Assembly: GCA_047495785.1 (NCBI GenBank)
Contig: JBLDXI010000007.1
Coordinates: 868,001 to 932,000, forward strand
Direction of reading: 5' to 3'
Length of the DNA: 64,000 nucleotides
From: Lepidodermella squamata
Taxonomy: Eukaryota; Animalia; Gastrotricha
Shown: one piece after another, positions 1 to 64,000 of the stretch
Position numbering within the stretch: the first letter of the stretch is position 1
Layout: every line of letters begins with the position of its first letter
The notes under the pieces: generated by a model
Databases searched by the model: none
What the model was told of the DNA's origin: nothing
The model's input: the letters and a program-made list of their open reading frames with translations, nothing else
Translations under genes and position numbers: made by a program

Positions 1-1407
1 AAAGTCCTTGGCTCAACAGAGACAGCCCATCAATAGCTCGAGCATTAGGATCGCCGCCATTTTTCAAATAAATTCTCACGACTTCGGTCGAATTGCGCCG
101 AAGCGCATAAGCGGCAGCATTTGGGGTGATAACTCCGCCATGATTGCATATGGACTCGAGAATTCTGTAGTTATTCCGCCAAACTGCATGAGCTACAGGG
201 CCGTGATTAAAGCTGAAATCGCCATGAGATTCAAGGTTGAAATCGTAAAATGGCTCCAAGCCATAAGCAACAACAATTTCAGGGTCTTGCTGAAGGATTT
301 CATTAACACCATTCTCGAATCCGCGAGAAATATTTTTACACAAATTAAATCTCTGCAAAATGAAAAACGTAAAAAAATATGAAAAATGGGTTCATTACAT
401 ACCATTGAGTTAATTCGAAACAGACTTGGGAGAACAAATCGCAGAGAGAGTCCTATTAAATCGTGGCTCCAGGCTATGAATCGAACGCCAGTTGGATAGT
501 CAGTAACGCCTCGGAACAAATTTAGAGCGTAACGCTGAGCTGTATCGCTTAATGGAAACTACGTTTCACGAAAAATTGAAATTTCCTCGAAATTTAGAAA
601 AAATGACAATTACCGTGATTTTTTGAAGTTCGCGCAAATCTTTATCAAGTAAATAAATTGACCGATCGCTACCCATGACCATCAAAACTTTGATTTGCAT
701 AGGAATTCGCAGGTCATCAATAGCCTTAAATATTCTGTTCTTGAAAAATATTTCTGAAATAAAAATGCAAACCTGATATAGACCAGATGGGATTTTGTAG
801 AGCCACCAGCAATTGAAGTGTTCTTTATTGCTGACAAATAGCTGGTTGATATCAGCATCATCTCGCGTTGTATGTGGAAATGTTTCAACGGTGACGCGCA
901 AAAATTCAGCCAAGCTCGGGTCACTAGACCCATCGGTGTCTTCGGCGGTGTCACGGTAATTCTGTGACGCGAAAACTACGGTTGCTTGCTTTTTCGAGGC
1001 TTTGTCCAAGAAATTGGGCCGAAAAACTGCCCCGAATTGCAACTTGGATCTCAACTGATGAAGAGCAGTTGCTGATGACAGAAATGTCCTAGCCCTAGCC
1101 GAATCAAATTCTCTAAAAACCAGGTCTTGAAAAAAGTAATCGCTGGCTAGATAGGCGCTCCATCTAAAATCGAAAATTCATTTCGAATAATTTTGAAAAT
1201 TTGTGCAGAAAATACTTACGCTTTACAGACCAACGAACAGTTGAGGTACAAATCAGAATTTCGGACCAGCAAAAATATGTGCTTTCTCAATTCCGGAGGT
1301 AGAGCGAATAAAATATCGAACGATTCCGAATGATCAAAATTTGACGACTTTGAAGGCGGAGAATCAGGGTGACAAGCATTCGAGATGCTACGCTTTCTAT
1401 TTTCCAT
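1..1407 (-). CDS. F-box/FBA-like/ankyrin family gene copy #1 (5 exons; 3' end runs off the window)
   Basis: Exon1 MENRKR..FDILFALPPELRKHIFLLVRNSDLYLNCSLVCKA; 56-bp GT-AG intron at 1164-1219; exon4 has TDYPTGVRF..RFVLPSL; exon5 from ~352 reads RFNLCK..QDPEIV..GGDPNAR (ankyrin start). Confidence 0.85.
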
Positions 1408-1575
1408 CAATTTCAGTTCAGTGGTAAAAATCAGTTCGTCATTTAAAATCAATCTAGGCATAGGTAGAGAGTGAGCGCTTTATTCAAATTATAACATCGA
1501 AATGAGCATATTATGATAAAAATTCTTCGATTGCACAAGAAAGCTCAACAATTGATTTGAAAAAGTAAAAAATGA

Positions 1576-4500
1576 TTACTGGTTAGTATGAGATTGCAAA
1601 AGCTTCCGAATTTCATCCTCAGGATCCCACTTAATCGCGTAGTCCAACGCGGTGCAACCATCCGAATCCTTGACATTCACATCAGCTTTGCGTTTCAACA
1701 AAACCTTGATCGCTTCTGCATTACGTCGCCTCGTGGCGATGATCAGCGCAGTTGATGTAGCTCCTTTGCCAAGACTACACACCGTATTCGGATCGAGACC
1801 AGCTTCAAAAATGGCAGCGTATCGGGAAACAGGAGCAAAATTAAGCATGTTTTTTCCTTTCTTGTTGACGCGGCTCAAATCAGCCCCGTGGGACATTAGC
1901 GCCCGTAACGGGTCAATTATCGAATAATCCGCAGCTTTCATAGCCAAAGTATCGCCATTTACATCAGTCTCATTAACGTCAGCCCCAGCAGATATCAGAG
2001 CTGATATAGCGCCTATCCGAAACCCACAACCTCTTGGCCTCACTTGTTCGAACAAGGCGTATTTCAAGTAAGAAGTGCCTGGCTCGAACTCGCCCTTCAC
2101 ATCACCACCCAGAGATGCATACACCTTGACAACTTCACCCAAGCCGTGTTTAAGCGCGTAAGCTAGGTACGTCCGATCGAATGGAGCCCCGTGTTTCATT
2201 AATTTTTCGATAATCCTTCGGTTATTGACACGGACTGCGTGAAACATTGGCCCATCACCGTAGCAATGATTCGGCCCGTCCGAAGCAAATTCAAGCCTCG
2301 TTTCGGCCTCTGATCCACGCAGCAAATCAGGGTCTTGTTTAAAAACATTATTGATAGCATTGTTCGCTTTCAGGCAAATGGCTTGGTTAAGCTCCAATCG
2401 CTATATATAAGAATAAATTTAAATAGCTCCAGAATTCAGGCATCGCAACTTACTCTCTCATTAATCCTACAAAGACTGGGAAATACCAGTCGAATGTACA
2501 CTTCCCCGATATAGCTATTCCAGGCAAAATACCGAACGCCAGGCGGGTAGTCCCAGAGGCTTATTAGGTCACCGCTTGTCTTGCTGGAAAAACTCGCGGT
2601 TCGCGCGAACTTGATATAGAAAAATTAATTATACAAAACATAATAAGGGGGTTATAATTTCTGAAATCGATCAGTGAATCGTCATCGACCCCACCAAAAT
2701 TGTTGACCCCTGTTTTTATGGCAGATTCAGATGAATTAGGCTACCCCTTCCAAACCGTTTTGTTTGAACGCTGAAATTTCGATCTCACCTGGGCAAAAAG
2801 TAACTTGACGCAAATTGTTGAGCTCTTAATGGAGCATTTCGTTTTTCAAAAATTCCGAGCTTCCAGTTGATCTATTCTCTTCCCTAAACAAATTGACATG
2901 TTGCCCATGATATGGCGAATCTTTTGACACCAAGCTCGTCTACATCGGGCACAGGTGAGATTTTTCGGCCTAAAAAGGGACATTCACTCACCTGGCTCGC
3001 ACACCTGGGTCAAGGTTTCAAAAATCGGTTTCAATTTTCAGTTTCGTAACCTTCGAACTCTTAGCGGGCCAATAAATGTTTTCGAAACAGCTACTAAATC
3101 AAATATGGAGAACAGCACCAGGATATTCCCCGCTCAGCAGCTGCTAACAAAAATTCTGCAAACATGAATGACGGTTCGTTATTAGAAATTTTTTTCGTAC
3201 GGAAATTTATGTTAGCTTTTAGCCACTTCGACTTCTTTGCCGCCGCCAACGCTTCGTGTTGAACGTAATTCAGTTGTCCGCAGTAACGCAGGTTCGATCG
3301 AACTACCGGGAAATCGAGATATCCCATGTCGTGAATCTCCATCGGTCAGTAACGTCGAAAACTCGCCTGCAGAAAAGCAATGCCGCCAGCTCAATAACTT
3401 TCAGCAGTGGCCATTGATGGTGGTTGGCTTGTTTTTGAACAATCTCGTATATATTCAAGTCTAGGATTTTTTAGATTCTTCAACGCCCCCGGTCATTGCT
3501 TCTGAAAGTAATGAGCATGCCGATAGCGTTGAACGCAGGGCAGTTGGTGCTGATCGTGATCGACTTCCAAGTTCCATGAAAATCTACCTCCATCTACTCC
3601 GGCGTCAATCGCGGTTTCTGATCGCGAAACTGGTCCCGATGGCAATGTGGTTTCTGGTCGTGATGCTGCACCCGATCGAAGCGTGGTTGTTTCCAGTCGC
3701 GAAACTGCTCCCGATCGAAGTGTGGTTCCTGGTCGTGAAATTGGACCCGATCGAAGCGTGGTTGTTTCGAGTCATGAAACTGGTGCCGTTGGAAGTGTGG
3801 TTTCTCATCGCGAAACTGATCTCGATCGTAGCTTGGTTTCTAGTCGTGGAATCGGACACTATCGAAGTGTGGCTACTAGTCGCGAGGCTCATCCGGAGCG
3901 AAGCGTGGATTCTCGTCAGAGCCCAGTTGTGCACGGCCGCGTGAAGGCAGAAATCGTGGTTGATGATGATGAAGATTGTTTCATAGTCGAATCGAACGTT
4001 AAAGCTGAGCCCTTCTCTACTAGTGTTGGGCGCATTGTAACGGCTTTGAGATCCAGTGGGAGTAAAAACGTTACCATAAATCTGAATTTTCATAATTGTA
4101 CATTCCATTAGAATCGATTTATATGCCAAATGTATAACTACTTGAAGTTTTGTTTTTATTTTTGATGTTTCATGTGCAATGAAAAAAATGTGATATTTGG
4201 GTTGTGATATATTTATTATTCGCTACATATTCTGAGGCTATTTATCGTTTGCACTGTTGATTGCTTGATAAAATGAACAAAAAAATGAAAAAAATGGAAA
4301 AACCAAAAATCGCAAACATCAACTTAAAACTTTAATGTAAATACAAAATGTACAAGTTCAATTTTGTTTTGTCGTTTAGAATGATTATACGATATTTCCA
4401 CTTCTCGTGACGACGAACGAAAGCGTGTTGATCCCAACAACCGCGTCACTTTTAGCTACTTCTACCAATTGTGACGGTGGTTCTCTGTAAGATTTTTTTG

Positions 4501-5756
4501 AACCATAAAAAACAGTGAAATTTCATAATTGATCGCAATAGCTATGAGAAAACGGTGTTATTTCATAGTTAAATTTTGTTCTATTCTTTGTTTTGTCAAC
4601 TATGAAATACCACAGATAATTCATAGTTTCATGTTCATGGCTGGTTAGAAATGTTATCAACCATGAAATATCACTGATAATACGCGTTTGATGAGTAAAA
4701 ACTAGCGTCATATCAACCATGAATTACCGCATTTTTGCTTCATTCTGGAAATTTTCTTAAATATTAATAAATTTTCTCAAGTATGAAAGAACACATGGCG
4801 TTTACCGTTTGAAAATTGACTTAGGTGCGCGAGCCAGGAGCCAGGTGAGTGAATGTCCCGCTTCAAGGCCGAAAAATCTCAACAATTTTGGTGAGATCGA
4901 TGACGGTCGATTTCTATCGCCCAAGGATCATTTCTTAACTCAAACCTGCAATGTTTGTATGATCATAAGATCCGAATTTAGCAGATGAAGCGTTCTATCC
5001 TCGTGCATCGGCCAAGTTGCAAACACTTGTATCGGAATGCGCAGTTTTTCAATAGCCTGGCATAACAAAATATTGAGGGCAAAATAAGCGGTTAAATCAA
5101 CATACTGTTTTACATAAAGCCGGAATTTTAACAAGCCTGCATTCGTGTCCCGGATGATCTGTGCTCGATATACAGCAATCTGGGTCGGCATCGTGGATTT
5201 CATCGACGTAGTTTTGAAAATCAGTTTTTACTGCACTCAAAAATTCAGGCAAATCAAGCTGCGCCAAACGAAATCGTCCGCAATAACCAGGTCGTATTTC
5301 ATGGCCATATTCATCGGGAACAAAAATACTGATAACGTTTTTCCCCGTGGGAAATCTTTCGGGGAAAATTGTTCGAAATACGAGCCGCGTTTTCATGACG
5401 GATCTGAGCTGCTCTACAGCTCCACTTATCCTCAGGAAAGATGAGCTCCTATCAGCTGGGAATTCGCGAAGAATCAAGCCTTCCCATAACGAATCGCTCT
5501 CGAAAAACGCATTCCACCTTATAAAAAAAGTAAAATATAACACTACATGGGAAGTTGTTATTTTAACCGACATTTTGCAAACCAGTGAGCAACGGAGAAA
5601 CAAGTCGCGATTTCTCAAATAAAGAAATATTTGCCTCCGGATTTCTGGCGGCAAAGCAAAAAGTAAATCGAACGGCTCAGGGCCTTCGGAATTCGGAAAT
5701 TTCGCGCTGGGTGCGCCGGCAGCGGGGTCAAAATTCTTCCTCTTTCGAGGAGGCAT
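1576..5756 (-). CDS. F-box/FBA-like/ankyrin gene copy #2 (intron 3 expanded to ~2.3 kb by a transposon)
   Basis: Exon1 MPPRKRK..LPPEIRRQIFLYLRNRDLFLRCSLVCK; exon3 ~4945-5057; exon4 ~2454-2609 (WDYPPGVRY..RLVFPSL); ankyrin exon 1576-2400 with GADVNETD..GDTLAM and KADVNVKDSDGCTALDYA. Confidence 0.88.
2707..2955. mobile_element. 249-bp nested MITE-like insertion with TGA target-site duplication
   Basis: TGA at 2704-2706 and 2956-2958 flanks cccctgt...acagg; removing the insert restores the sequence seen in the intact right TIR (ttgttgagatttttcgg). Confidence 0.7.
3605..3915 (+). repeat. Degenerate 33-36 bp minisatellite (~9 units) encoding SRETxPDRSVV repeats
   Basis: Repeated gtcgcgaaactg..cccgatcgaag(c/t)gtggtt units; ORF 3647-4111 shows the repeated peptide. 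Confidence 0.8.
4503..4748. repeat. Cluster of direct and inverted TCAAC(C/T)ATGAA motifs, possibly a nested MITE or subterminal repeats
   Basis: tcaactatgaa and tcaaccatgaa (x2), with inverted ttcatagtt and ttcataattga copies. Confidence 0.45.
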
Positions 5757-6022: not shown

Positions 6023-7914
6023 TCAGTCGGAGTTCTTTAGCAATTTGAGAATAGCCCCCGTCGCGTCGTTTTTCACATGATCAAACGCATTCAGCCCATT
6101 CGAATCTTTGATAGTAGGATCCGCTTTGAATTTCATGAAAAGCTTGATCATATCAGTTTGGCGCTTTTTCACGGCAGCGATCAGTCCAGTAGCAGTCGAG
6201 CCGTCCGTATCAACAAAACAGCTGTTCGGATCGATCCCAGCGTCGAGCAGGCGCTTCACATGGCTCGAATTAGCGTGCGTAAGAACGCTCTCCCCCTTCT
6301 TGTTGGTCAATTTGAAATCAGGGCCATGAGGCAATAAAGCTTTGAATGAATCGTAGTCGCGTTTAACAGCCTCCATCAACAACGTATTACCCTCTTCGTC
6401 TGTTTCATTGATATTCGCCCCGGCTGCGACGAGAGCATTAATGACAGACTTTCCGCAAGGCAAACCGAGCGGCCTGCCAAACAGAGCGTGTCTCAACAAG
6501 GAAATGCCACTCGGTGTTTTCCTGTTCGCATCACCACCGCGAGAATTGTAGAATGTGATAACATCACCCAAGCCATTTTCCAACGCGTATAGGACGTGGC
6601 TGATATCGAAAGGAGCTCCGTGCTCAACTAATGTCTCTAGTATTGCCTTGTTATCTCTACGTAAAGCATGAATCATAGGACCATATGGGCACGTGTAGCT
6701 GTCAGGAGTGTGACAGTCAAATAACTCGAGATTTTCCGTTGATTCCGCATCAGTGCCCAACAGAAGTTCTGGATCTGATTTGAAAATGTTTTCAATACCT
6801 TCACGAGATTTTTCGCAGATACGTTTGCACAACTTAACTCTCTTTGGTAGAAAACAATTTTAATAATAGCGCTAAGAGAAACTAAGATGATACAAACCAA
6901 TTGATTGATTTTAGCCAAAGAGGGCAGGACGAATCGTATTGAAATTGGTCCAAGCAAAGTACAATTGGAGGACATGAAGCGAATCCCGCGCGGATAGTCA
7001 GTGATTGTTTTCACTGGGATCTGAAGCCGTGGCATTGAATTGAACGAATTCAACAGAAACTAGCGCATCTTACCTTGATCGTATGAATCACCTGCAAAGT
7101 TGCGTCAAGAAGAAGGATAGTGCGATCTTCATCGCAGGCCCAGATAGAATCAAACATGCTGCAACAAGTTATTTCGAAGGGCATTCGGAGATAGTCAAAT
7201 GCCTGTGTATCGGGGAAAAGCCTTGAAAAGCTATCATCGCTTAAATTGAACACTCACTTCATAGCATCCAACAGGTAGCTTTAAAAGCCAGAACTTTTCA
7301 AAATGACCTCGGTAAATTACAACGGGCGAAAAATCTGCGTCAGAAACCGTAATTTCAGGGACAGCGGCGTGAACTGCTTCGAAAAACTGTTTCATTTCAA
7401 TTTCTTCAAAAGTTTCTCGCTGGGCGGAATGGGATCGAATGACTTTCCCTGTTTCAGCTAAGATGTTGCTAGGCTCCGTGATTGAGAGTCGAATCAGGTC
7501 TTCATCACGACGATTGACGCCAACATTACGGCGGAAAATGGCATAAGACTTCAGAGATTCTTTCAAGCTAGAAATCGCGTTTACTGACGAGCAAAAAAAC
7601 GCGCGAGCCCGGTCCGTAGGAAATTCGCGAAGAATCAATCCTTCCCAGAAAAAGTCACTGTCCAGAAAATTCTTCCATCTGTAAAACGGAAATTTTTTGG
7701 ATAATTCAAATGAATTTGCTCGATTGACCTACTCTTTGCAAACCAGAGAACAACGGAGAAAAATGTCACGATTTCTAAGGTGGAGAAATATCGTTTTTCT
7801 CAGATTCAGTGGAAGTTTGAACAACAAATCAAATGGATTAGGTTCTATCAAAGGCAGCTTCGAGAGAGGTCCATTTGAATCAGAATACGCATTCACTCGT
7901 TTTCGTGACGCCAT
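6023..7914 (-). CDS. F-box/FBA-like/ankyrin gene copy #3
   Basis: MASRKR..LPLNLRKTIFLHLRNRDIFLRCSLVCK; four short GT-AG introns; TDYPRGIRF..RFVLPSLAKIN; ankyrin exon 6023-6842. Confidence 0.9.
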
Positions 7915-7975: not shown

Positions 7976-10439
7976 TTAACTTTTTAAAAGTTTCCTGTAA
8001 TTCCTGAAATGTTCAAACAGCATATGAATGAATTTTTCTGAAGTCAATCGCAAGGCAGTTTCGCCTTCGTTATTTTTCACGTCCAAGTCGGCCCCCCTAG
8101 TCAGCAGAAAAACTAGAGGATTCATAGCAGAATTCATCACTGCTCGCATCAACAACGTGTTGCCGCGAGCATCGACTTCATTCAAATTCGCGCCAGCGCT
8201 CACCAGCAGATCCAAACACCTGTCACTGATGTAAGGATAAAAACCATGATTGAGCAAAGAACGTTCAGAGTAAGAGGAACGAGCATTCGGATCGCCACCA
8301 TTAGCCAGGTAAAGCTTCAAGATTTCATCACGGTCATGCTGCATAGCGACAGCAGCGCAGTTAGCAGTGATGACACCGCCGTATCGGCAAATTATTTCGA
8401 GAAATGAGGCTCTGTTCCAGAGTACTGCGCAAGATACGAGGCCATTACTGTAATCGACATACTCAGGGCGAGAATCTTTATCTGGATCGGCCACATCATC
8501 ATCGCCATGAGCTTTTATCAACAGCGGGTCTTGACTTAGATTCGATTCGAATTCTACCGGCGATCCTAGAACAATCATCTTCGCCAAATTTGCACGCTGT
8601 TGTAAAATTATAACATTTATTTAATTGCAATAGCCCTGACGTGAGGGCAACTGTGGACAGGAATTGAAGTGATAACGAATTTTTGAAAAATAATGTAAGG
8701 AGTGTCATTACGGATGCCGTTGGGACCGTTGAACGAATTTTAATAAAGATTTACTGTTTTAAATAGAGCAATGCGCCCTAAATTCGGACACTTTTTGGGT
8801 TTTTTCTACATTGCCACCCAGGTGAATTTTTGGAAAATAATTGGTAAAAGCAGGAATACAGAGAAGTTCTCGGGCTATCGAATGCCGGTTTCCACAAGTC
8901 CGGACGTTTTACCTTGATTTATGGCTAATTTAGTTGTAACCTGGACTCCTGGCCGGACTCCGAGTGCCCTAATTTCAGCCACCTTATCCAGTTAAGCTAA
9001 TACCTAAAGTTTGTTACCTATGAAACAGATTGAAACAGAGAATGCAAATTTCTTGAATTTCGTGCACAAGAACTGCTGCACACCACTTTGTGTCCATATT
9101 TTATTCGAAAATTAGGTCGCAGCGGCCGAATTTAGGAACTGGCCGAAATTAGGGATTTCTGCTCCAACTAAAATCGGACGATTGGGTTTAGCAGTGCATC
9201 CATGAATAAAATTGGCAAAATTAGGAATTAACAGGAATTTAAATAATTTTCACAAATTAAAAAAAAACAGTGGATGTCCTAAATTTTGTTTTTAAAATCT
9301 GCCCTAAATTGTCTTCAATCGCGTATAATGAGGAAAAACACAGAAAAATTCGCAAAATTGACTTTGAAACTTTGAAAAAACATGGTTCAATTCAATGTTG
9401 GCCCGCGTTACAGAAATTCAATCAAATAAATCAATACCATTTCGTTGATTCGGAGCAAGCTTGGAAAAACGAGACGTAACGACATGCCGCATAAACTGCT
9501 GCTCCACATAATGTATGTCGCACCGCGTGGAATACGCGCCTTGCCTTCAAAATGCACGAACTGTACCCGCTCATGAGTTACCTGATTGCCGAAATATCAA
9601 AATCTGAGATGGGAGAAATTTTTAAAACAAACTTCATTCCTTTCAACAACTCGCAGCTCTCTATCCAAAAAATAGTACGCGCGATCTTGCCCAAGTGCAA
9701 GGCAGACTTTGACTTGTAGTGGTAGACAAAGTTTGTCAGTAATCTGAAATGGAGTGAAGTTGAATCAATTCAAGGTGATTCAATCAACTTTTAATAAATT
9801 ATCCGGAAATCTGATCAACCACCAGCGGGTTTTGCATCTCTTCCAGGTGACAAAATACTGTTCCACGTTCGCATTCACTTCGACATTTTTCGGAAAGTTG
9901 TTGCCAAGAAATTCAATGAAGTCCGCAAATGTCGGATTTTCTATCGCCATTTTGCAGCGGAACACCATATCATTATCGCCCACATGAATGTCTGTTCCAA
10001 GTACACGGGAAGCAGTTTCTCGATCAATATTGAATTTTCCAATCGCTCTTTCCAAATAGCTTTCTCGAAACAAATTGCGAGACTTCATCAGCGACTTCAG
10101 TTGAGCAACTGAATTTTTATCTTCCAGGAAATTTCTCGCATGTTTAGGGCCAAATTCTTGCGCGATGAGATTTTCCCAAAAGTAGTCACTGTCGAGAAAT
10201 GCGCACCACCTTAGGCAATAAAAACTAATTCCAATAGCTCAGCGGTAAATTAATCTAACATACTTCGAGCAGACTAGGGAACAGCGTAAGAACAGATCCG
10301 AATTCCTTAAAGATAAGAAAATCGTTGTTCGCAGTTCGATTGGAACAGCTGTGATCAAGTCGAAAGGTTCCGAGCTGCCAATTTTTACATGATTTGATCT
10401 GGGGCTAACCAGAAGATTAGTGCGACGATGCATTGGCAT
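7976..10439 (-). CDS. F-box/FBA-like/ankyrin gene copy #4 (short ankyrin array)
   Basis: F-box VPIELRTTIFLSLRNSDLFLRCSLVCSK; exons 3-4 ITDKLCLPLQV..RIPRGATYI..RLVFPSL; ankyrin exon 7976-8597; intron 4 ~840 bp containing a MITE. Confidence 0.88.
8766..9164. mobile_element. MITE with imperfect TIRs in intron 4 of copy #4
   Basis: gagcaatgcgccctaaattcgg at left; reverse complement of the right end is gagcagaaatccctaatttcgg; the CCTAA(A/T)TTC motif recurs internally. Confidence 0.6.
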
Positions 10440-11011
10440 TTAAAATTCATCAATCTATTTATTAAGAGGTGATCGTCATAAAAAGGGAGTACGGAGTGAA
10501 CTGGATAATACATTGCCCCTTCAAAATTAAGGAAAATTTAAAAAATCACAATTTCAGAAACAAAATAGTTTGAGATAAATCTGAACATTTTCTTTTTATT
10601 TTCGACCTCCGGATCCAGCAATCGCTTGGTCCAAAGTGTTGAAACCCTTGAAATTTGCGATATTCACATTAACTTTGAATTTAAAAAACACATAAACAGC
10701 TTGCGAATTACGGCGCTTGAACTGTCATTTTCAAAGCAACATGTGCTGCGGTCTAGAGCTCAGCTTCGAATAGGGTACCATATACGGAGAGGAGTGGCAA
10801 TTTAATAATATTTTAAAAATCTAAAAATGTTTAATAAGCTGGAATGTTTAATATGAATTAATGGGCACATAATATAAATAATTTGGACATGATTCAAGTA
10901 TTATAAAGGTGAACCTCATAGGCGAACAAAGTAAAATATCTTAACAAATTCGAATTACAATAGGTATGCATCATTCGACCCCCATGTCATCAATAAATCG
11001 ATGCCAGAACT

Positions 11012-13363: not shown

Positions 13364-15099
13364 GATATAAAATCGCAACAATTAAACAGTTCATATATAT
13401 TGAAAATGATCATTTTTTGTCCTCTGGTTGTAAAAGCCGTCGAATTTCGTACTCAGGATCCATCTTCATTGCATAATCCACAGCGCTGAGACCCTTCGAA
13501 TCTTTGGCATTCACATCAGCCTTGTATTTCAACAAAACCTTGACCGCGTTTATATCACCACCTCTAACAGACACGATGAGCGCAGTTGAGGCCGATCCGT
13601 CCTTATTAATATAAGCCGTATCTGGATTCAGACCAGCTTCCAAAAGAATGGCGAACCGAGTCGGATGAGCGAAATTAAGAATGCTTTGGCCTTTTTTGTT
13701 GACACGGCTCAAATCAGCCCCGTGAGAAATCAATGCTCGCAACGGGTCGATAATCGACATTCCGGCCGCTCTCATAGCTAAGGTATTGCCATCTTTATCG
13801 GTTTCATTCACGTCTGCTCCGGCGGCGATCAGGGCTGAAATAGCTCCCTTTCGGTAGCAAAGACTAGGCCCCTTCTCTTGATGAAACAGGGTATACGCTA
13901 AGTAAGAGATACCCATTCGCAACTTCGCCGTTCCCATCGCCGCCTAGCGACATGTAAACCTTGACGATCTCGCCAAAGCCGTATCTCAACGCAAGAACTA
14001 GGTAAGACCGATCGAATGGCGCGCCATGAAGCATCAAAGTTTCAACAATTCCTCGGTTATTAGCACGAATAGCGTGATACATTGGCCCTTGGCCATGGCG
14101 ATAACGTGTTTCGTATAGGATATAGTCAAGATGGCCGGTTTCAACCTCCGACCCACGCAACAAATCAGGATCTTGCTTAAAAATAGGATCGATTAAAGAG
14201 GCCATTTTCATGCAAATCCTTTGGCACAGAGCAAGTCGCTGTAAAATAATAAAATTCAACGGTAAAAAAAAAATCAAAATTTTAAGCTTACCAGCTCATT
14301 GATCTTGCAAAGGCTGGGAAAGACCAGTCGAATGAACACGTCCCCGATATAGCAATTCCAGGCTAGATATCGCACGTTTGGTGGATAGTTTTGCAAGCTG
14401 ATCAAGTCACCGCTTACTTTCGAGTCGTAATCAGTTTCAGCGAACTAATTAAGACGAAAATAAAACATATTGCATCCATTGATAAGACTAAAAAACGATA
14501 GGAGTTCCGTTTAGTTTACTACGGTGTTGCCTGCTTAGTATTTTTAGGAAATTTTGTCAAAGGTTCATTTTCCGAAAATGCAATAGACGAACGAATTAAC
14601 AAACTAGGAAATGTATCAAAAAAGAAGAAAGGAAGATCGGCAGTTCTACGGCAAAATTTTGAAGCAGCTCATCAATTGGAAAATATAATCGCTGAAGTTT
14701 CGAGATCTGATATCAATTTTCATCGTTGCGAGAATTCAAAAGCTTGTAGCTGAAACAATTCGACTGGAAGTTACGGCCGCTCATGTCACACATTTTCTGA
14801 CTACTCAAGGTGTTTTAATCGACCTAAGGGCCGTCCCACCAAATCACGGTCTAATATATTTTCCGCCGGCCGCCGGTCGCGTAGTGTCAACTCGTGGTTA
14901 CTCGCGGTTGTAGGCTACTCAAATAGGATAGCTTTATCTGCCGAATTCAGCAGAGAAAGCAAACGGTTTGCCGCGAACTTGACATGTTAATTGCCGATTC
15001 TTCTATTTTCATACAGCGAATTCGTTCCAAATTTGCAGTGAAGCTGAATCAACGTGAAATGACGCCCATCTCTATTAGTAGCCCATTTTTAGGATTTTT

Positions 15100-24369: not shown

Positions 24370-24470
24370 AGCCGAAAAATTTCTCGAGTTCTCCGATGGA
24401 GAAATATCGACCGCCTGATTTCGGGTGGCAATGAGCTTAAAGAATCAGCAAATTGACCTGCCACCATCAA
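24370..24470 (-). pseudogene. Orphan degenerate F-box exon-1 fragment (#10)
   Basis: FADSLSSLPPEIRRSIFLHRRTREIFRLL, with no downstream exons before the next gene. Confidence 0.65.
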
Positions 24471-53200: not shown

Positions 53201-53394
53201 CGATTCACGTACTTTTTGCAAACAAGAGAGCAGCGGAGGAATAAATCGCGATTTCTCAGTTTGAGGAATATCGCCCTTCTCACCTCGGGTGGGAGATTGA
53301 ACATTAAATCGAACGGGTTCGGTTCAAGGAACTGAATTCTCGAAGGGGGTTCAGTCGAAACAGCATCTGCATTTTTACGTTTCCGCGGCGGCAT
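50228..53394 (-). CDS. F-box/FBA-like/ankyrin gene copy #19 (chimeric ankyrin exon; intron 3 expanded to ~1.2 kb)
   Basis: MPPRKRK..LPPEVRRAIFLKLRNRDLFLRCSLVCK; DDYPRGIRYIAS; ankyrin exon 50228-51091. Confidence 0.88.
51339..52492. mobile_element. ~1.15-kb insertion flanked by the 8-bp direct repeat CGTTAGCT
   Basis: cgttagct at 51331-51338 and 52493-52500; excision would leave a ~68-bp intron, close to the usual size here. No clear TIR seen. Confidence 0.5.
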
Positions 53395-53650: not shown

Positions 53651-56600
53651 TCAATGATTTCCTTTCAGCAATTCAGCAATAGTGCCTGATTTATCGCTGA
53701 TCGCATGATCGAAAGCGTTCAAACCATTCGAATCCTTAATCTCAGGATTTGCCTTGTACTCCATCAGCAATTTCACCGCATCCTTATTCTGCCGTTTCAC
53801 AGCTGAAATTAGAGCAGTAACAACTGATCCGTCTCGGTCCGTGTATGTACTGTTAGGGTCGATGCCAGCTTTGAGCAAAACAGCCATACGACTCGGGGTA
53901 GCACGTGACAGCACCGTTTCACCGTATTTATTAGCCAATTTCATATCTGCACCGAGTTCCAGGAGAAATCTGAACGGTTTGATATTTTCATTCAAAGCTT
54001 TCATCAACAGCGTATCACCGCAGTCATCCACCTCATTTATGTTGGCCCCGCCCGCGACCAGGGCTGTAATAGCCGATTTTCGAAACGGCATATCCATAGG
54101 CTGGTGGAAAAGAGCGTAGCGCAACAACGACAATTCGCCCCGTTTGAAATTTGGGTCAAAACCGCGGGATAGAAACAGCTTAACGCCCTCGGCCAGTCCG
54201 AATCTGATGGCATAAAACAGGTACTTTTCATCGAAAGGAGCTCCGTGGTCGGCGATTGTTTGCAAGATCGCCTTATTGTTCTGCCGATATGCGTGTACAA
54301 TAGGTCCGCTTTTGCGCATGTAAGGAGCGCCGATAATATCATCAGCGGTATCACCGAACGGAGTTCTCTCCAACTCGACACCTCGCACCAAATCGGGGTC
54401 CTTTCGAAAAATTGAGGCGATTTCCGAATGCGATCGGCTTATAATAGCCATGCAGAGATCCATTCGCTAAAAAAATGAAATCAATATGGGGTCACTAGCA
54501 TGCGACAATGCGGTAAAAAAATTAGAAAAAAATGAAAAAAATGGAAATATTTGAAGAAATTTAATTTTGAACGGCCAAAAACCAAAAATCTGCTGCATTT
54601 ATGTTAGAGCCAAAATTAATCGAATCGAAGCATACTACACTGTAAAAAAGTTCGATATTTAGCACTAAAACAATTTGAGAAAAAAGGACTTCGCGAAATT
54701 TTTTATTTTATGGAGAAATTTAGAATTTCCAAGCATCAATAATTTGTAATTTGTATTTTGCTATCTTCTGCTTTTTTCTAATCACTGAAATTAACCCAAT
54801 TTTTGACCAAAAATTAGAACTCGTAAATTGTTCCGAAAGGATCCGCGAATCAACCCCCCGGTTATGGTTTCGACCATCCGTGGCATTGAGGAAAATAAGA
54901 TCGTCGAAGATGAAAATGATTTCGCACTCGAAATTACGCCGAAGAAACAGTTAACAATTAAGGAAGAGATTCAGGAATATGAAGAGCCGCTGTCAAGGAA
55001 ATCGGGCGGGGCATCAAATTGCGGCCAAAATCGCGGATCCGTTTCGAACTGACCCTGAACCTGAGCGCGAAGATAAGTCAGTGATTTTCAAATTTTGAAA
55101 ATATATTCGAACCAGTTTTGTTCTTGCTAGTGTGGTTACTGACCCAGATAATGTCCTCATGTTGGCCCTGAGCAAATCATCCGACATCAAGTAGAAGAAT
55201 GTAGCGGAAGTTATAACTCGATGAAAGTTCTAATAGCTAGTAATGTAGTCCTTACTAAAACTCCTTTAGGTTTGGCGGACATTTTGTTACTGGTAGAGCA
55301 AGAGTTGGGAAGACCTTTCAAAGTTGAAATCGGCTTACCAATTACCAAACAAATTTTCGATTGATTGTAAAAGGCGGAGTTCAACTGGTGTCAATGCTGA
55401 AACCTTTGGCGTCGCAAACATGAAAAATGTGAAATATCCGAACGGAATTCTATCAGATCAATAACCTGAGCTTCCTGAGAACGATTTATGTGACTTGCTA
55501 TCCTATACAGTGTCCAAATATGCTCTCAACATTGGTAAGCTATCCTGTGTCGTCAACAAATACGGCATCGACATTCTCGAGAAGCATGAGTGCGTTCCGA
55601 CGAAAATCTTCACCGCTAATCAATGCAAAGATCAAGGTACAAAGCGGTAATGGAAGGTTTCTACTCGTCAAAGCGGCACTGGCGAATTCTCTGCGAATTC
55701 TCTGCTCCCGATTGCCTTTTATCCTGAACTCTGATCTCTTAGCAAATTCTACCGAATTATTTTCCAGCCGTCCATGCATTTGAAAAATTCAGCCAGCGTG
55801 AAGTTTTTTTTGCTGTTGGAGGTAATATTCAAGTCTTCGCTACAAAGACAACTTTTGCGCCGTTACTCTACATGCATTTGCGCTCCCAACATACCGACGC
55901 AAAAGAGTTCATTGTTATTAACGTTTCGCCTGACACTTCTGATCTGGCCTGCTGTTTTATGGAAATTTGTGCCAGCGTATACAACATTCGTGATATTTGC
56001 GTCGTCGGCGACTCTAACCTCTTTCAACTAATTATTGGGTCGAGCCGTGAAATTGTTCCAGGTCTACATGCCAAGGTGTTAATGCCTGTTTTAGTAGACG
56101 GAAAGTACAACATCAGTGATTGGCAGAAGTCGAATAAAGTCGCTGTTGATTATTATAAACATTTGATGAATACGCCGTCGGCTAATAACTTGCGCATCTG
56201 TGCCTTCTTGCTTGCAATCTTCCAGCGTAAGGAGTGTAACATTGAACATGTGCGAAATCTAGCCTTGAAAAGTTGGAGGAAACTGATATTAGTGCAAACA
56301 TTAACGCCCGTCAACTGATCGCAACTGATGGCTCTTCAAAGAAAAACAAGAGGCGAAGTCGATCGGCTGCGAAATCAAAGGCCGCCGCAGATGTGAGCTC
56401 GGAAACAACACCTGACAATAGTGACAGTGACTTCAAGCCCAGTCCTACGAAGAAACCTGACAAAAGGTCACTACAAAGCCGCTACAGTCTACGAAACAGA
56501 TCCGAACCATCCACTGTCCAATCAAAACAACCCGTGGGCAGACAGTTCCAAACAACAGTAAATCGTGACAGTAAATATTGGTTCCTTCGTTTACGACAAA

Positions 56601-58387
56601 GTCTACTAGCAGTCTATTGGCGACCAGTCCAAACCTCACGGCTACAAAAGCGGCTAATTCTGGAAATAAGGGTTGGTTGCAATTTATTGCTAAATAATAA
56701 TAAGGACTGGAATATTTATAGATTTGGTGGAGATTACACTTCGACTCTCGCAAATCAGCTCCAATGATTCTGAGACGCAGCGCTCTGTTGTTCAAATCAA
56801 TTCGCAAGATCCGACAGCAGCCGCGATTCCACTGGGCTTCACTGGTACAGAACCACAGGCGAATGAAATAAACAGCACAGGTTAGGTTCATGCAACTGGT
56901 TGGAAATGAAAAATTCCCGTGGACCTTCCAGACACCAACTAGACATTGCTTTCTGTTTATAGAATTGGACCCTCCATCGCAAAACGTGGAACTTGCCTCC
57001 AATGCTCGACTGGAACTGGACATTGCATCTACTCAGCAAGTGACAGTAGTCAACATGACAGGTAATAACATTACGGCTTAAGTCAATAGAACCGATATTT
57101 TATTCTCAAGCATCACTAAACTGAAACCCGGATTACATTGATGAAATGCATGGACAAATGCATTTGTTGAAGCTATGGAAGGAAGAGCCGCTGTCATCTC
57201 GCCTATCGTGTTCCGATCAGATTCAGAAAAGTTCGCAGAAAAGCAATTTCTAGGCTAAATAGGAGGCTCCCAACGTACTAAATACCCGAGTACATCGGAA
57301 GATAATTAGCGTCTAAATAGCAAACCTTTTTTTTAACAGTGTAGGGACATTCAAAAAATGTCGGAAAAAATTACCAGTTGATTGATTTTCGCAAGGCTCG
57401 GAAAGACGAATCGCAAATAAAGGGTGTAATTTCCACAATTGGAAGCGATGAAACGAACACCGGGAGGATAGTCGGTAACGTGAAACAAAACTTCGCCATC
57501 ATTTCGCACCGAGGGCCCAGAAATAGGCAACTGAAATATATACGTAAAATCGGCAATGAAAACTTGAAAATTTCAAAATGTCAACTGACTTTTATCGAAT
57601 GAATTGGCTTAAGATTACCGTCAAGTAAATGAATAACCCGGTCATATTTCTCAGGTTTGCTGACGTAGATTTCCAAAGGTGGTCTCAGCAGATCGAAAAC
57701 CTAAAATCAAATCGAAAAATAGGATGCAATTCAAAATATTGCATAGTAGAACCTCTCGACACTTGACGGGCAGTTTTGCTATCCATCTGTCCTTAACATT
57801 GTGCTCCTTTTGACTGGCGACAAAACTGTCAACATCTTTATTTGGCGACACAAAATCAGGAGCAACAATCGGCAAAGCTGCGAGAAATTGCCTGAAGTCG
57901 CTGGTTAACGAACACTCGTTCATCAGACCGCAATCGGGGGTCCACGGTTGCGGGGGCAATTTCGGCAGTGAAATCGTCACAGCAGCGTGCTTTCTATTCA
58001 TGAAATAGGTTCGAAAAATCGAGTGGGTTTTCAGCGCATTTCTCAACGCCTCCAAAGTGCCCATTCTGTGGACAAAAGAACAGGCTCTATCCGCCGGGAA
58101 TTCGCGGTGAATTAGCACATCCCAAAAATAATAGCTGTATAGAAAGGAGTTCCACCTAAAAATAATTCAAAATAAATCAGCTCGAAAAAAATACAATTTG
58201 CTAACTTTTTGCAGACGAGCGAGCAGCGTGAAAAAATGTCCCTGTTTCGCAGGTAGAGGAAAACCAACTTCCGTAAATCCGGTGGAAGCGCGAATAACAA
58301 ATCGAAGGGATTGCTTTCGACATCAGGAGATTTGAAAACAGGGGTTTTGACCACTTCATCGGTATTTTTCCGCTTTAGAACTGGCAT
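53651..58387 (-). CDS. F-box/FBA-like/ankyrin gene copy #20 (intron 4 expanded to ~2.9 kb)
   Basis: MPVLKRK..LPPDLRKLVFLYLRNRDIFSRCSLVCK; exon3 VFDLLRPPLEIYVS; exon4 TDYPPGVRFIAS..RFVFPSL; ankyrin exon 53651-54466. Confidence 0.88.
54638..57341. mobile_element. CACTG-terminated CMC/EnSpm-like DNA element, 2.7 kb, with decayed internal ORFs
   Basis: Left cactgtaaaaaagttcgatatttag; reverse complement of the right end is cactgttaaaaaaaaggtttgctatttag; TA on both flanks; fragmented plus-strand ORFs at 54828-57081. Confidence 0.75.
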
Positions 58388-58502: not shown

Positions 58503-60433
58503 CTAATTTGCATCCAACAACTTTGAGATAGTATAGTTTGCCTTTGCGTAATCGGAAGCGGTGAACGACTCCGAACTCCAAAACCGCTTATCAGCTTTAA
58601 ATTTCAATAAAATTTCAACGCTTTCCGCATCTTGCCGTTTTGCGGCCAAGATTAAAGAGTTTGTGAAAACTCCGTCACGATCAAAGAAAAAAGTGTCAGG
58701 ATGAACACCGGCTTTTAATAGGGGTTCCAGGCAAGCTGAAGTGGCATAGGTGAGGACAGTTTCTCCCCTTTTGTTCGCAATCTTGAAATCAGCCCCCATA
58801 TCCAACAGATCTTTCAGCGGCCCGGTAATATCCTCAGAGAATTTTTCTTCTCTAAAAAATGAAAGATTTCTGAATTGCCTTTCAATCCTTTTAGTCGTCA
58901 GCATCAGGAGCGAATTCCCGTCTTCGTCAAGCTCATTAACGTTAGCTCCAGCCGCAATCAAAGCCGGAATAGCACACTTTCGATTGTACTCATAAATAGG
59001 CTGGTGATCAAGGGCAAATCGCAGTAATGAAACGCCTCCTGAGGTTTTCGAATTAGGGTCACCGCCGCGACTGACAAACACCTTCACGACATCGCCAAGA
59101 CCATGATGGAGAGCGAATTCAACGTAACTGTTATCGAAAAGAGCTCCATGATCGATCAAAGCTTTGATGATCGATTCGTTGTTGGTGCGAAGGGCGTGAG
59201 CCATAGGGCCGTTTTTCCAAAAGTACGAGTCCACCGATTTTTTCACGAAATCATAAGAATCAGCAATTTTTTCGGCATCTGAACCAGCCAGAAGATTGAC
59301 ATTGTTATCAAAAATGTCGTTTACAACATCAGAGGATTCGAAACAAATCGCTTTGATAAGCTGTTGCCTCTATAATAAATTCAGATAATTAAGTTAAATA
59401 CAAAATTCAAATTTCAAAACTCACGGCGGTGTTGATTTTCTCAAGCCCAGGCATTACGAACCGAACAGAGAGCTGAAAGAAATCGCTGCTTGAAGATAAG
59501 TAACGGACACCAGGAGGGTAGTCGGAAAACGATGTGAGAATACCAACGTTTTTGCGAGAGGTGAGTCTGCACTGAGGTAGATATGAAAGTCGAAAAATTT
59601 GATTGATGTAAAATTATAAACAAAAAATCTACCTCAATTACAGATAAAACTTCCAAATCGGAATTTAGCAGGTAAATTTGGCCTGGTCTTCGGGTCGCGC
59701 TGACAAAAACTTGAATCGGCAAGGACAGTAAATCAAAGGCCTAATGACAAAGATTTAAAGAAATACGAACAAATATCAAATTGTTTCCTACATTTGAGCA
59801 TTGCGAAGGAAGCTTCATAATCCATGCAGGAAGATCTTTTCGCTCATGACTGACGACAACAGCGTTCGAATCCCAATCAGCAGTGAGAAATTCGGGTAAA
59901 GCGATTGGAATTGCAGTGAGAAATTCTTCCATTGTGGTTTGCCAAGATCTTTTCTCAACGAGCTTTGGATCGATAACTTAAAGCGGCATTTGATTTCTTC
60001 CGTGGCAGCTGCGTGAGTCTGGAACGTAAATTGACACTGAATTTTTTATCAAATGTTCATCCATTAGAAAAGGCCGGAAAATGACATCTTTCTTCAGGCT
60101 TTGTTTCAGCTCACGCAGTGCATTTCCGGAGCTCTAGAACAGACGCCCTCTTCCATCGGGAAATTCGCGCGAAATCATGGCCTCCCAAAAATAATCACTG
60201 TCCAAAAAAGTATTCCAGCTGCAATAAAAAGTTCAATTTGTTTCCAAGTTATATAACTATTCAACGGTAACTTACGCCTTGCAAACAAGTGCACAACGAA
60301 GGAATAAAATTCGGTTTTTGAGGTGAATAAAAATCTGGAGCTTCAATTCAGGTGCTAGCAGAGCGAAATAATCGACCTCATCTTCTGTATTTTCATTTGC
60401 GTGAAAACGTCGTATTTTCTTAAAAGAATACAT
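58503..60433 (-). CDS. F-box/FBA-like/ankyrin gene copy #21
   Basis: MYSFKKIRR..FALLAPELKLQIFIHLKNRILFLRCALVCKA; exon4 TSFSDYPPGVRYL..RFVMPGL; ankyrin exon 58503-59369. Confidence 0.86.
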
Positions 60434-60546: not shown

Positions 60547-62889
60547 TCATATTTTTAGAAGTTCAGGGGTCTTTTTCAATAAATTAGCGATTTCGCCAAA
60601 CGGGTCGTCCAGCTCAGCGTAATTGAGAGCCATGCATCCGTCTGAATCTTTCAGATTCTTATTGGCACCGTGATTCAACAAAATTTCAACGGTTTTCAAA
60701 TCCTTTCTTTTGACAGCCGAAATAAAGGCGGTGGTCATCGATCCGTCCTGACGTAAGTAGCGCATATTCGGATCCAGACCAGCTTTGAAAAGCTTCTCCA
60801 GCCGATTACCACGACCACGCGTGTAAGTAATCACACTTCTGCCCTTCTTATCGATGCGGGAAAAATCAGCACCGTGGTCGATCAATGCGCGCAAAGGGCC
60901 TTTGGCTTCATGAGTTATAGCTCGCATCAACAGGGTTTTGCCATCGTTGTCACATTCATTAACATCAGCCCCATGCGCGACGAGGACTGAAATGGCTGAT
61001 TTGTGATAGGTTTCGTCTTTCGGTTGACAGAATAACGCGGTGTAAAGATAGGACTGGCCTTCAGGCGTTCGACCATTCGGATCGACACCGCGATCCATGA
61101 ACATTTTCACGACATAGCAGAAGTTGTACTTCAATGCGAAGATCAAGTAACTCAAATCAAACGGAGCACCATTTTTAAGGAGGATTTCGATTATCGGTAT
61201 TTTGTTATGCCGAACGGCGTGATTCATGGGGCCTTCTTCACGACAATAACATTTCGGATCGATGAAATAGTTGTCGCCAAACACTTCGACTTGAGATCCT
61301 CGCAGCAGATCTGGCTCGCGCTCAAAAATCGCGTTCATTCCCTGGGTGTTTTTACTGCAAACATTTGTGATCAGATCCTTTCTCTGAAAAATTGCATAGC
61401 GAAATATTAACAAAGGTATGTGCGACGTTATTCTCGAGACTCTTATATTCCCGATAATAAAGACTATTTTAAAGCTTTTACAGAAGACCCCGCAGAAGCT
61501 GCTGAGAATCATAGAATTAAATCACCTCTCTAGCACATTCCAAAGAATCACCAGCCTCCTGTACAAAACAGCTAGAGATTTTGCTTTCGAATTTTATTTG
61601 ATCATCGATTTTCGGAAGCAGAAGCAACAAAAACTCCCCTAAATCGACCCTTTTAATCTCCTGATACAGGTGGATTCCCTACAAAAATTACCTTAAAATT
61701 AAGCTAACGTGGAAGCTCATTAGGCAAGGTGGAATGAAATAGTTCAGTAGCCAGCAACCAAAAGGGCGTCATGAAAACAGTCAACTGACAAATCAGCTTA
61801 AGAATTTTCTGAATCATTTTTTAAATTTTACGAAAAAAGGTTTCAGTTACCAATTTGTTGATTTTGAACAAGCTAGGGAAGACAGCACGGATTTCGCGAC
61901 ACAAGATCGCGGAATTCGACGCCAAAAACCTGACACCAGCAGGGTAATCCTCGATAGCTACAAGCTCTGAGGCATCATCCTCTAAAGCAATTGGTAACTA
62001 TAAAAGTAGAAGATTTTTTTCGACAGCAAAATAAATTTAAAGCATCATACCTGAAAAGTGTGAATAATCTTAAGTTTGGAATCGAGGAAATAAACCGCTT
62101 GATCCGATTCACCACCGGACTGAAAAAACATTTGCATTGGCAGTCGCAAGATATCAAAGCTCTATACAGATGAGGTACAAATCAAAGCGAAAAGCAGCAT
62201 CCCAGTCAACAAACTTTTAAGCTGCCGATGGGTAGTTTCACAAGCCAGTAGTTTGAATCGGAATCCTCCTGAAAAGGGAAGACAATATCATCGTAGTCTA
62301 TATCGGGCTCCAAGATTTCGGGGATAGCGTCAGGTACAGCTCTCAGAAATTCGTTCAAGCCGACATCTGAGTCTCGCAAGAGTTGGTAATCGTTTATAGG
62401 GTCGATTAGCCTAGCTCGGCCAGTATCTCCAGCACGAATATCGGGAACGTAAATTAGCACAGAGCCTCTACCGAACGCCATGTCCAAAGACAGCGTCCGA
62501 AACATTCGCTTCGTTTTCAAATCATTCCGAAATCGAATTAAATTAGCACTGTCCCTCAAAAATGACTTGCACGCATCGGCATCAAATTCCATCTGCAACA
62601 GACCTTCCCAGAAGAAGTCTCTCTCAATGAAATTCCTCCACCTATAAAAATAATAACTTGCCAAAAGCTGCAATTTAATAAGACGTGTGACGATTTACTT
62701 TTTACAAACTAGAGAGCAGCGCAGAAAAATGTCCCGATTTCTTAGGCACAGAAAAATCTTCCTGGTGACCTCAGGCGGTAGAGAAAACAGAAAATCGGTC
62801 GGTTCTTCGACATGGGAGCGGCTTATCTTCGCCTGCGATGATTCTTGTTCGCTTTCAACATGATGATTATTACGTTTTTGAGGCGGCAT
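60547..62889 (-). CDS. F-box/FBA-like/ankyrin gene copy #22
   Basis: MPPQKR..LPPEVTRKIFLCLRNRDIFLRCSLVCK; EDYPAGVRFLAS; intron 4 ~465 bp; ankyrin exon 60547-61383. Confidence 0.88.
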
Positions 62890-63271
62890 AATTCAATGAT
62901 GCTCAAAATTCTAGGAGAAAGGCATTATTTGACGAAATTATAATTGAGCCAGATCACGAAGTATTCTTCATTGGAAAGCTCAGTGTTTTTCAACAAATTC
63001 ATCATCAAAAATCGAAATTTACTAAAAAAACCAGGTGAAACATCAGACAGGAAAATGGAAAGAAGAGGGAACATGATTCAATTTTGTAAAGGAATAAAAA
63101 TGAAGAAAATTATTTTTGGCGCCAAAAGAGCGAAGAGCTCGTTTCGATGCAAAAAAAATCTGTAATTTTATGATAAGAATACATCGCTACAAAATTTGGC
63201 AATGAATTACAGTGCAAACATTAACAAAACAATGGGTATGTGATGCGTTAAAAAAAAGAATAAAGATCTAT

Positions 63272-64000
63272 TCAAAATTTGGAATTATGTCTCGAAATCT
63301 TTTTCGATTTCTTATTCAACAAATGAGCGAGTTCGCTAAACGGGTCGTCCAGCTCAGCGTAATCAAGAGCCGTGTATCCGTCCGAATCTTTCAAATTCTT
63401 ATTCGCACCGTGCCTCAACAAAATTTCAACGGTTTTCAAATCCTTTCTTTTAACAGCCGAAATTAAGGCGGTCGTCATCGATCCGTCCTGGCGTATGTAA
63501 CGCATATTCGGATCGAGATCAGCCTCGAAAAGCAGTTCCAGTCGACCGCGATTAGGCGCATAATCAATAACACTTCTGCCTTGGTTATTGATGCGGGCAA
63601 AATCAGCTCCATGATCAATCAACGCCCGCAAAGGGCCCTTGGTTTCATGAGTTATAGCTCGCATCAACAGGGTTTTGCCACGACTGTCGCACTCGTTTAT
63701 ATCAGCACCATACGCCACCAGGACTGAAACTACTCCTTTTCGAAATATAGGTCCTTGACGGAAAAGAGCGGTGTAAAGATAAGACCGGCCTTCAGGGGTG
63801 TAACCATTCGGGTCAACGCCTCGTTTCATGAAAGTTTTCACGACATTTCTCAGTCCGTTTTGCAACGCGTATATGAAGTAACTCAGGTCAAAAGGAGCGC
63901 CATTCTGCAACAGGATTTCGATGATTTGCCGATTATCACGGCGAATGGCGTGCATCATTGGGCCCTCGTAGTGATGGTACGCCTTTGGATCGTCACAACG
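63272..64000 (-). CDS. Ankyrin exon of copy #23 (5' exons outside the window; close paralog of #22)
   Basis: Shares DPNMRYxRQDGSMTTAxISAVKRKDLKTVEILL and YAELDDPF with #22. Confidence 0.85.
   Translation of the reverse strand, partial: RCDDPKAYHHYEGPMMHAIRRDNRQIIEILLQNGAPFDLSYFIYALQNGLRNVVKTFMKRGVDPNGYTPEGRSYLYTALFRQGPIFRKGVVSVLVAYGADINECDSRGKTLLMRAITHETKGPLRALIDHGADFARINNQGRSVIDYAPNRGRLELLFEADLDPNMRYIRQDGSMTTALISAVKRKDLKTVEILLRHGANKNLKDSDGYTALDYAELDDPFSELAHLLNKKSKKISRHNSKF

What the first reader, a model, noticed from the sequence alone, without database searches (positions are those of the whole stretch)
1..64000. Large head-to-tail array of an apparently novel NLS-F-box-FBA-like-ankyrin gene family
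Seen: 23 co-oriented copies with the same five-exon plan (phase-2 intron inside the F-box, phase-0 introns 2-4), continuing past both window edges, strongly diverged, with pseudogenes and fragments mixed in. Established: F-box proteins bind Skp1 in SCF ubiquitin ligases; large birth-and-death F-box expansions in nematodes and plants have been proposed to act in pathogen recognition; N-terminal F-box plus ankyrin fusions are best known from amoeba-infecting bacteria (Legionella AnkB) and giant viruses. Inference: a lineage-specific bank of diversified nuclear substrate adaptors, possibly for intracellular immunity or anti-transposon degradation.
Basis: partly seen in the sequence, partly recalled or inferred. 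Interest (0 to 1): 0.85.

Follow-up and report, generated by a model that had tools for sequence, protein, structure and literature searches.

The report
F-box, remodelled FBA, ankyrin gene array
A microscopic animal (probably the gastrotrich Lepidodermella squamata) has a long row of old, diverged copies of a gene for the target-choosing subunit of a ubiquitin ligase, apparently made by adding an ankyrin-repeat arm to an FBXO44-type protein that lost its sugar-binding loop; I found this design nowhere else, but nothing shows an immune role and the test for positive selection was negative.

Summary
Observation confirmed. There are 23 minus-strand units: 14 intact, 5 damaged, 2 fragments and 2 cut by the window edges. 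All share five exons (intron phases 2,0,0,0; median 54 nt) and are 20-63% identical. F-box and ankyrin domains pass Pfam cut-offs, and 16 of 20 copies begin with a basic cluster. The middle domain is probably a remodelled FBA beta-sandwich: three individually weak signals map in register onto FBXO44, and the sugar-binding loop is about 14 residues shorter. The exon-2 profile finds nothing in 1.84 billion proteins. Copies are under purifying selection (omega 0.22; F-box 0.12, ankyrin 0.21). Site models detect no positive selection, and simulation shows a strong signal would have been seen. There is no sign of a bacterial or viral origin. Unpaired splice acceptors before the start codons and 61-170 nt gaps suggest trans-splicing, perhaps operons. 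The scan has already noted related F-box/FBA, F-box/ankyrin, TRIM-ankyrin and SOCS-ankyrin arrays elsewhere in this genome. Verdict: new variant of a known kind.

The parts
1..1407 (-). g01, cut by left edge; exons 1407-1220, 1163-773, 724-614, 558-403, 352-<1; no lesion in view
1576..5756 (-). g02 intact, 562 aa; exons 5756-5572, 5517-5106, 5056-4946, 2609-2454, 2400-1576
   Evidence: Pfam
6023..7914 (-). g03 intact, 557 aa; exons 7914-7733, 7678-7258, 7202-7074, 7020-6898, 6841-6023
7976..10439 (-). g04 open frame, 490 aa, ankyrin arm shortened at the C-terminus; exons 10439-10264, 10209-9789, 9743-9633, 9581-9438, 8596-7976
10617..10721 (-). orphan piece of the C-terminal ankyrin repeats, probably the lost end of g05
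11012..12846 (-). g05 open frame, 497 aa, shortened like g04; exons 12846-12659, 12601-12187, 12134-12024, 11973-11830, 11647-11012
13410..16913 (-). g06 damaged (frameshift near 13929 in exon 5); exons 16913-16729, 16679-16262, 16207-16097, 14444-14292, 14238-13410
16999..19147 (-). g07 intact, 559 aa; exons 19147-18969, 18918-18504, 18192-18079, 18021-17875, 17823-16999
19492..21454 (-). g08 damaged (stop at 21320-21322 inside the F-box); exons 21454-21258, 21208-20815, 20762-20661, 20601-20434, 20379-19492
21972..23899 (-). g09 intact, 571 aa; exons 23899-23718, 23665-23212, 23154-23044, 22992-22837, 22784-21972
24372..24455 (-). f10, F-box fragment
24601..26541 (-). g11 intact, 575 aa; exons 26541-26354, 26298-25896, 25845-25729, 25671-25507, 25455-24601
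26925..29339 (-). g12 intact, 575 aa; exons 29339-29158, 29105-28652, 28596-28486, 28432-28271, 27743-26925
29622..31359 (-). g13 intact, 509 aa, divergent clade B; exons 31359-31187, 31134-30768, 30718-30614, 30557-30435, 30383-29622
31700..38973 (-). g14 damaged (frameshift near 31795), clade B; exons 38973-38825, 36347-35996, 35946-35842, 35784-35650, 32345-about 31700; MULE element in intron 1
39263..45097 (-). g15 damaged, clade B; exons 45097-44949, 44896-44542, 44491-44387, 44327-44187; exon 5 split by a LINE into 43531-43106 and about 39571-39263
45223..47008 (-). g16 intact, 521 aa, clade B; exons 47008-46827, 46765-46420, 46369-46262, 46200-46087, 46038-45223
47558..49193 (-). g17 open frame, clade B, exon 2 shortened to 79 codons; exons 49193-49045, 48995-48758, 48706-48608, 48543-48403, 48349-47558
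49557..49912 (-). f18, fragment (exon 1 and the start of exon 2), close to g17
50228..53394 (-). g19 intact, 585 aa, in-frame partial repeat duplication with a g03-like tract; exons 53394-53213, 53154-52710, 52647-52537, 51306-51151, 51091-50228
53651..58387 (-). g20 intact, 555 aa; exons 58387-58206, 58155-57753, 57700-57590, 57530-57375, 54466-53651
58503..60433 (-). g21 damaged (two stops in exon 2); exons 60433-60276, 60218-59792, 59740-59633, 59571-59425, 59369-58503
60547..62889 (-). g22 intact, 570 aa; exons 62889-62699, 62641-62215, 62161-62051, 61997-61851, 61383-60547
63272..64000 (-). g23, ankyrin exon only, cut by right edge
39572..43105 (+). LINE retrotransposon with an open 1092-codon endonuclease/reverse-transcriptase frame (39685-42963), inserted in g15 exon 5
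36374..38785 (+). Mutator-like element with long inverted ends; transposase frame 37399-38565; in g14 intron 1
2956..4881 (.). inverted-repeat-bounded insertion in g02 intron 3, with a 36/75-nt tandem repeat at 3613-3917

Best explanation
A host gene family of SCF (Skp1-Cul1-Rbx1) substrate receptors, 460-585 aa. It most likely arose when an intronless ankyrin exon (an N-cap plus about 5-7 repeats) was joined through a phase-0 intron to the end of an FBXO2/6/44-type F-box/FBA gene. It then spread by tandem and two-gene block duplication, with losses, transposon hits and occasional gene conversion. Likely working: the basic N-terminus imports the protein into the nucleus (inferred); the F-box docks on Skp1 (inferred from a conserved, Pfam-positive motif); the FBA-derived sandwich has lost its glycan loop and serves as a rigid spacer or second binding surface (inferred); the ankyrin arm binds a protein target, which is then polyubiquitinated and degraded (inferred). 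The repertoire is old and maintained, not in a current arms race. The target class is open. My odds: foreign or selfish proteins about 40%, the animal's own regulatory proteins about 40%, decoy or other roles about 20%. The members are probably trans-spliced, and the tightest neighbours may be co-transcribed.
Against: No FBA signal is significant alone: no Pfam FBA hit, and unrelated sandwiches score as high or higher. The exon-2 half of the domain matched nothing and is more helical than FBA. No RNA evidence for expression or splicing. Skp1 binding, nuclear import and targets are untested.
Confidence: 0.7

Rival explanations
1. The array is a rapidly diversifying intracellular immune or anti-transposon receptor bank, like the nematode F-box/FTH families, with ankyrin binding faces driven by an arms race.
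For: Large array, birth and death, low identity, a converted tract in an ankyrin exon. Binding-face sites have higher omega than the rest, 0.34-0.36 against 0.27, p about 0.01. Nematode F-box genes show this pattern and one acts in the intracellular pathogen response (PMC12062965). Unchecked scan notes describe parallel TRIM-ankyrin and SOCS-ankyrin expansions in this genome.
Against: No site class above 1: M1a/M2a p at least 0.78 and M8a/M8 p = 1 in all four data sets. Simulation detected 10% of sites at omega 3 in 4 of 4 runs and at omega 2 in 3 of 4. Outer, non-binding surface sites have the same omega, 0.33. Even sister copies have dS near 1, so the duplications are old.
Confidence: 0.2
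2. The middle domain is not FBA-derived but an unrelated or new beta-sandwich, and the short shared motif is convergent.
Against: The same protein family appears in sequence and structure searches in the right order and register, directly after an F-box. If only F-box proteins are counted (my estimate, at most 200 chains) the exon-4 hit is about E 6e-5. An unchecked scan report reaches the same reading for a sister array without ankyrins.
Confidence: 0.2
3. The genes came from an amoeba-associated bacterium or a giant virus (AnkB-type F-box/ankyrin effectors) and were domesticated.
For: The F-box-then-ankyrin order is known from Legionella AnkB (PMC4209131), and the ankyrin exon has no introns.
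Against: Four conserved spliceosomal introns and an FBA-type middle. Only one protein reached E 1e-10 for the ankyrin exon, at 28% identity (lengths of about 150-470 aa only). The weak PRANC hits are the F-box itself.
Confidence: 0.05
4. Two separate neighbouring genes (F-box/FBA and ankyrin) repeated as a pair, or a largely neutral pile of redundant duplicates.
For: FBXO44 ends right after its last strand; there is no RNA here; about a third of the units are damaged or fragments.
Against: No stop before the exon-4 donor in any copy; donor and acceptor at homologous positions; intron 4 is only 48-59 nt in 12 copies; exon 5 has no shared start codon; omega near 0.2 in every region.
Confidence: 0.05

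Closest known systems
FBXO2/FBXO6/FBXO44 (Fbs1, Fbs2, FBG3; F-box + FBA)
   Same: N-terminal F-box, helical linker, then a beta-sandwich whose second half aligns in register, including the YPxGVR motif.
   Different: The beta9-beta10 glycan loop is about 14 residues shorter with no conserved Tyr-Trp pair; the first half is unrecognisable; an ankyrin arm is added; basic N-terminus; dozens of copies instead of a handful.
Legionella AnkB and other F-box/ankyrin proteins of amoeba-associated microbes
   Same: F-box in front of ankyrin repeats, so the same logic of target recruitment to SCF.
   Different: Host genes with introns and an intervening domain; no close sequence relative found; not secreted effectors.
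Poxvirus ANK/PRANC proteins
   Same: Ankyrin repeats plus an F-box-like motif (PMC4353913 listed; details from my own knowledge).
   Different: Opposite order: their F-box-like motif is C-terminal.
Caenorhabditis F-box A/B families (FTH, FBA2)
   Same: Lineage-specific birth-and-death expansion with a constrained F-box and transposons nearby (PMC12062965).
   Different: Different binding domains; those show positive selection in the binding domain, and this array does not.

Membership tests
F-box proteins (SCF substrate receptors) | F-box motif above Pfam cut-off | tested here: met
F-box proteins (SCF substrate receptors) | C-terminal protein-binding domain | tested here: met
   Ank_2 E 2e-22, 1e-19 and 1e-17 in three copies
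F-box proteins (SCF substrate receptors) | binds Skp1 and ubiquitinates a target | not testable with these tools
   needs co-IP and ubiquitination assays
FBXO2/6/44 (FBA) family | Pfam FBA (PF04300) match | tested here: not met
   no hit exon by exon; joined domain not searched
FBXO2/6/44 (FBA) family | ten-stranded beta-sandwich after F-box and linker | tested here: inconclusive
FBXO2/6/44 (FBA) family | glycan pocket Tyr-Trp in the beta9-beta10 loop | tested here: not met
   loop about 14 residues shorter, no conserved pair
FBXO2/6/44 (FBA) family | protein ends after the FBA domain | tested here: not met
   the frame continues through a phase-0 intron into ankyrins
AnkB-type microbial effectors | intronless microbial gene, F-box directly followed by ankyrins | tested here: not met
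   four introns and about 200 aa between the two
Arms-race F-box repertoires (nematode type) | birth and death with a constrained F-box | tested here: met
Arms-race F-box repertoires (nematode type) | positive selection in the binding domain | tested here: not met
   weak or episodic selection not excluded
Trans-spliced operon | unpaired acceptor shortly before the start codon, short same-strand gaps | tested here: met
   position-based test was post hoc, PWM-based test not significant
Trans-spliced operon | leader on the mRNA and a polycistronic precursor | not testable with these tools

The most novel reading that the evidence does not exclude
This is one arm of a phylum-specific intracellular recognition system in which ankyrin cassettes were grafted independently onto F-box, SOCS-box and TRIM ligases. 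The array is a co-transcribed, trans-spliced bank of nuclear receptors that destroy foreign or transposon proteins, held by long-term balancing of specificities and reshuffled by conversion between repeats.
Probability: 0.2. Interest if true: 0.8.

Novelty: new variant of a known kind. Interest (0 to 1): 0.5.

Why it matters
It appears to record a change of specificity in an E3 receptor: a glycan-reading F-box lectin lost its sugar loop and gained a general protein-binding arm, then multiplied. I found no paper or database protein with this three-part design, though the searches were limited. Animal F-box proteins usually carry LRR, WD40 or similar domains, and ankyrins usually go with BTB (PMC4327156). 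If the targets prove to be foreign, it would be an independent invention of ubiquitin-based surveillance in a phylum with no immune genetics. If the array is an operon, it would be an unusual case of a paralogue repertoire transcribed as a unit. On present evidence it is an unusual architecture in an ordinary type of expansion.

Full report
OBSERVATION. The window is 41-42% GC, and its long frames lie mostly on the minus strand. F-box-like starts and ankyrin frames recur about every 2-3 kb. I wrote a protein-to-genome spliced aligner, seeded it with one hand-built gene and iterated with profiles, then corrected two exon 3/4 borders by eye. Fourteen have complete open frames (g04 and g05 with a shortened ankyrin arm, g17 with a shortened exon 2). 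Five are damaged (g06, g08, g14, g15, g21), two are fragments, and two are cut by the window edges. All 20 copies with introns have phases 2,0,0,0, and the median intron is 54 nt. About 20 kb of the window lies in long intron inserts and the LINE, among them an intact-looking LINE inside g15 exon 5 and a Mutator-like element in g14 intron 1. Identity between copies is 20-63%, median 29%.

ORGANISM. Not told, and not proven here. Earlier scan notes suggest the gastrotrich Lepidodermella squamata. The scan's 1991 windows on 147 pieces fit the published 122 Mb, 157-contig, 43% GC assembly (PMC11660948). That paper does not mention F-box, ankyrin or trans-splicing. Nothing suggested human DNA.

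ANATOMY. Exon 1 holds a basic cluster (at least three K/R in six residues in 16 of 20 copies) and most of the F-box. Exon 2 holds the end of the F-box, two further helices, a variable loop region and a conserved strand. Exons 3 and 4 are beta-rich. Exon 5 holds a capping helix pair and about 5-7 ankyrin repeats. F-box and ankyrin matches pass Pfam cut-offs. That exon 5 belongs to the same gene is inferred from four things: homologous splice positions, no stop before the donor, an intron 4 of 48-59 nt in 12 copies, and matching sister pairs in trees of the two halves.

DISTRIBUTION. The exon-2 profile found nothing among 1.84 billion representatives, and one ankyrin exon found a single 28%-identical generic ankyrin protein (length-limited). 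Literature searches found no animal F-box/FBA/ankyrin protein, but the library is incomplete. Unchecked scan notes report that the array continues for 12 more genes to the right (s1-398109), a 17-gene F-box/FBA array without ankyrins (s1-398085) and an F-box/ankyrin cluster (s1-421991) on other pieces. These fit a history in which an ankyrin exon was added to an already expanding FBA-type family.

EVOLUTION. The tree has a main clade, a g04/g05 pair and a clade B (g13-g17) that is contiguous in the array. Adjacent sisters (g04-g05, g14-g15) and a two-gene block duplication (g08,g09 and g11,g12) show tandem growth. Omega is 0.22 overall: F-box 0.12-0.14, exon-2 middle 0.23-0.24, FBA-like part 0.23-0.24, ankyrin 0.21-0.22, by IQ-TREE and by my own codon code. 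Closest pairs have dS of 1.0-1.4, so the duplications are old. Site models on four data sets found no positive selection. In simulations on the fitted tree the test caught 10% of sites at omega 3 every time, 10% at omega 2 in three of four runs, and 5% at omega 3 in one of four. Strong pervasive selection is excluded; sparse or episodic selection, and selection in the gappy loops that I trimmed, is not. Ankyrin binding-face positions have omega 0.34-0.36 against 0.27 elsewhere, but outer surface positions have 0.33, so this reflects exposure. A tract of about 120 nt in the g19 ankyrin exon is 93% identical to g03, against 66% overall, at the site of an in-frame partial repeat duplication. This shows recent exchange between copies 44 kb apart.

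TRANSCRIPTION. Six stop-to-start gaps are only 61-168 nt. A TAG ends 12-35 nt before the start codon in 14 of 20 genes, against 1-5 in equal bins further upstream (shuffled mean 7.6, p 0.0035). This test was post hoc, the copies are not independent, and a PWM-based version was not significant. Only 3 of 18 such acceptors have a donor at normal intron distance, as in shuffles (3.7), against 63 of 68 real introns. Unpaired acceptors are what trans-splicing predicts. Other scan reports claim RNA evidence for a spliced leader in this genome (not checked by me). Trans-splicing of these genes is likely; operon transcription is possible.

MECHANISM AND VERDICT. Shown: structure, domains at both ends, constraint, birth and death, and the absence of strong positive selection. 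Inferred: Skp1 binding, nuclear import, target binding by the ankyrin arm, and FBA ancestry. It works like an SCF substrate receptor. It is an F-box protein, but not a member of the FBA lectin family in the strict sense and not an AnkB-type effector. The immune reading remains possible but has lost its predicted signature. Interest 0.5; new variant of a known kind.

Four queries were contiguous genomic frames that happen to read through an intron without a stop (5106-5756, 16097-16678, 19495-20601, 25507-25845). For the fold of 25507-25845 I chose single-exon rows that aligned correctly to it. Joined models existed only inside local scripts, for alignment, trees and codon models, with X or NNN at the breaks of g06, g08, g15 and g21; g14 was simply read to its premature stop.

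Noticed in passing
window 39572-43105 (+): LINE with an uninterrupted 1092-codon endonuclease/reverse-transcriptase frame and a short tandem-repeat tail, inserted in antisense into g15 exon 5; looks recent.
   Followed up: partly
window 36374-38785 (+): Mutator-like element with long imperfect inverted ends and an A-rich apparent target duplication, inside intron 1 of g14; transposase probably spliced from frames at 36702-37298 and 37399-38565.
   Followed up: partly
window 2956-4881: Insertion with 44-nt inverted ends in g02 intron 3, holding a 154-codon plus-strand frame made of a 36/75-nt tandem repeat (3613-3917); no Pfam match.
   Followed up: partly
window 14445-16096, 32346-35649, 51307-52536, 54467-57374: Long intron inserts with short acidic or low-complexity frames (15365-15802, 32876-33244, 34894-35358, 55872-56318, 56273-56767) and no Pfam match; probably decayed transposons, a nested gene not excluded.
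   Followed up: partly
window 6300-6460 and 50580-50720: Gene-conversion-like tract between g03 and g19 (93% over about 120 nt, against 66% overall). The 3' ends of g22 and g23 are also 91% identical against 77% overall.
   Followed up: yes
12-35 nt upstream of most start codons, for example 7947, 16932, 23918: Splice acceptors without a matching donor, and stop-to-start gaps as short as 61 and 85 nt: signature of trans-splicing and possible operons.
   Followed up: partly
window 13076-13228, 21516-21650, 33533-33924: Short inverted-repeat pairs, MITE-like, between or inside genes.
   Followed up: no
window 7976-12846: g04 and g05 both end after about five repeats, and an orphan C-terminal repeat piece lies between them (10617-10721).
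   Followed up: partly
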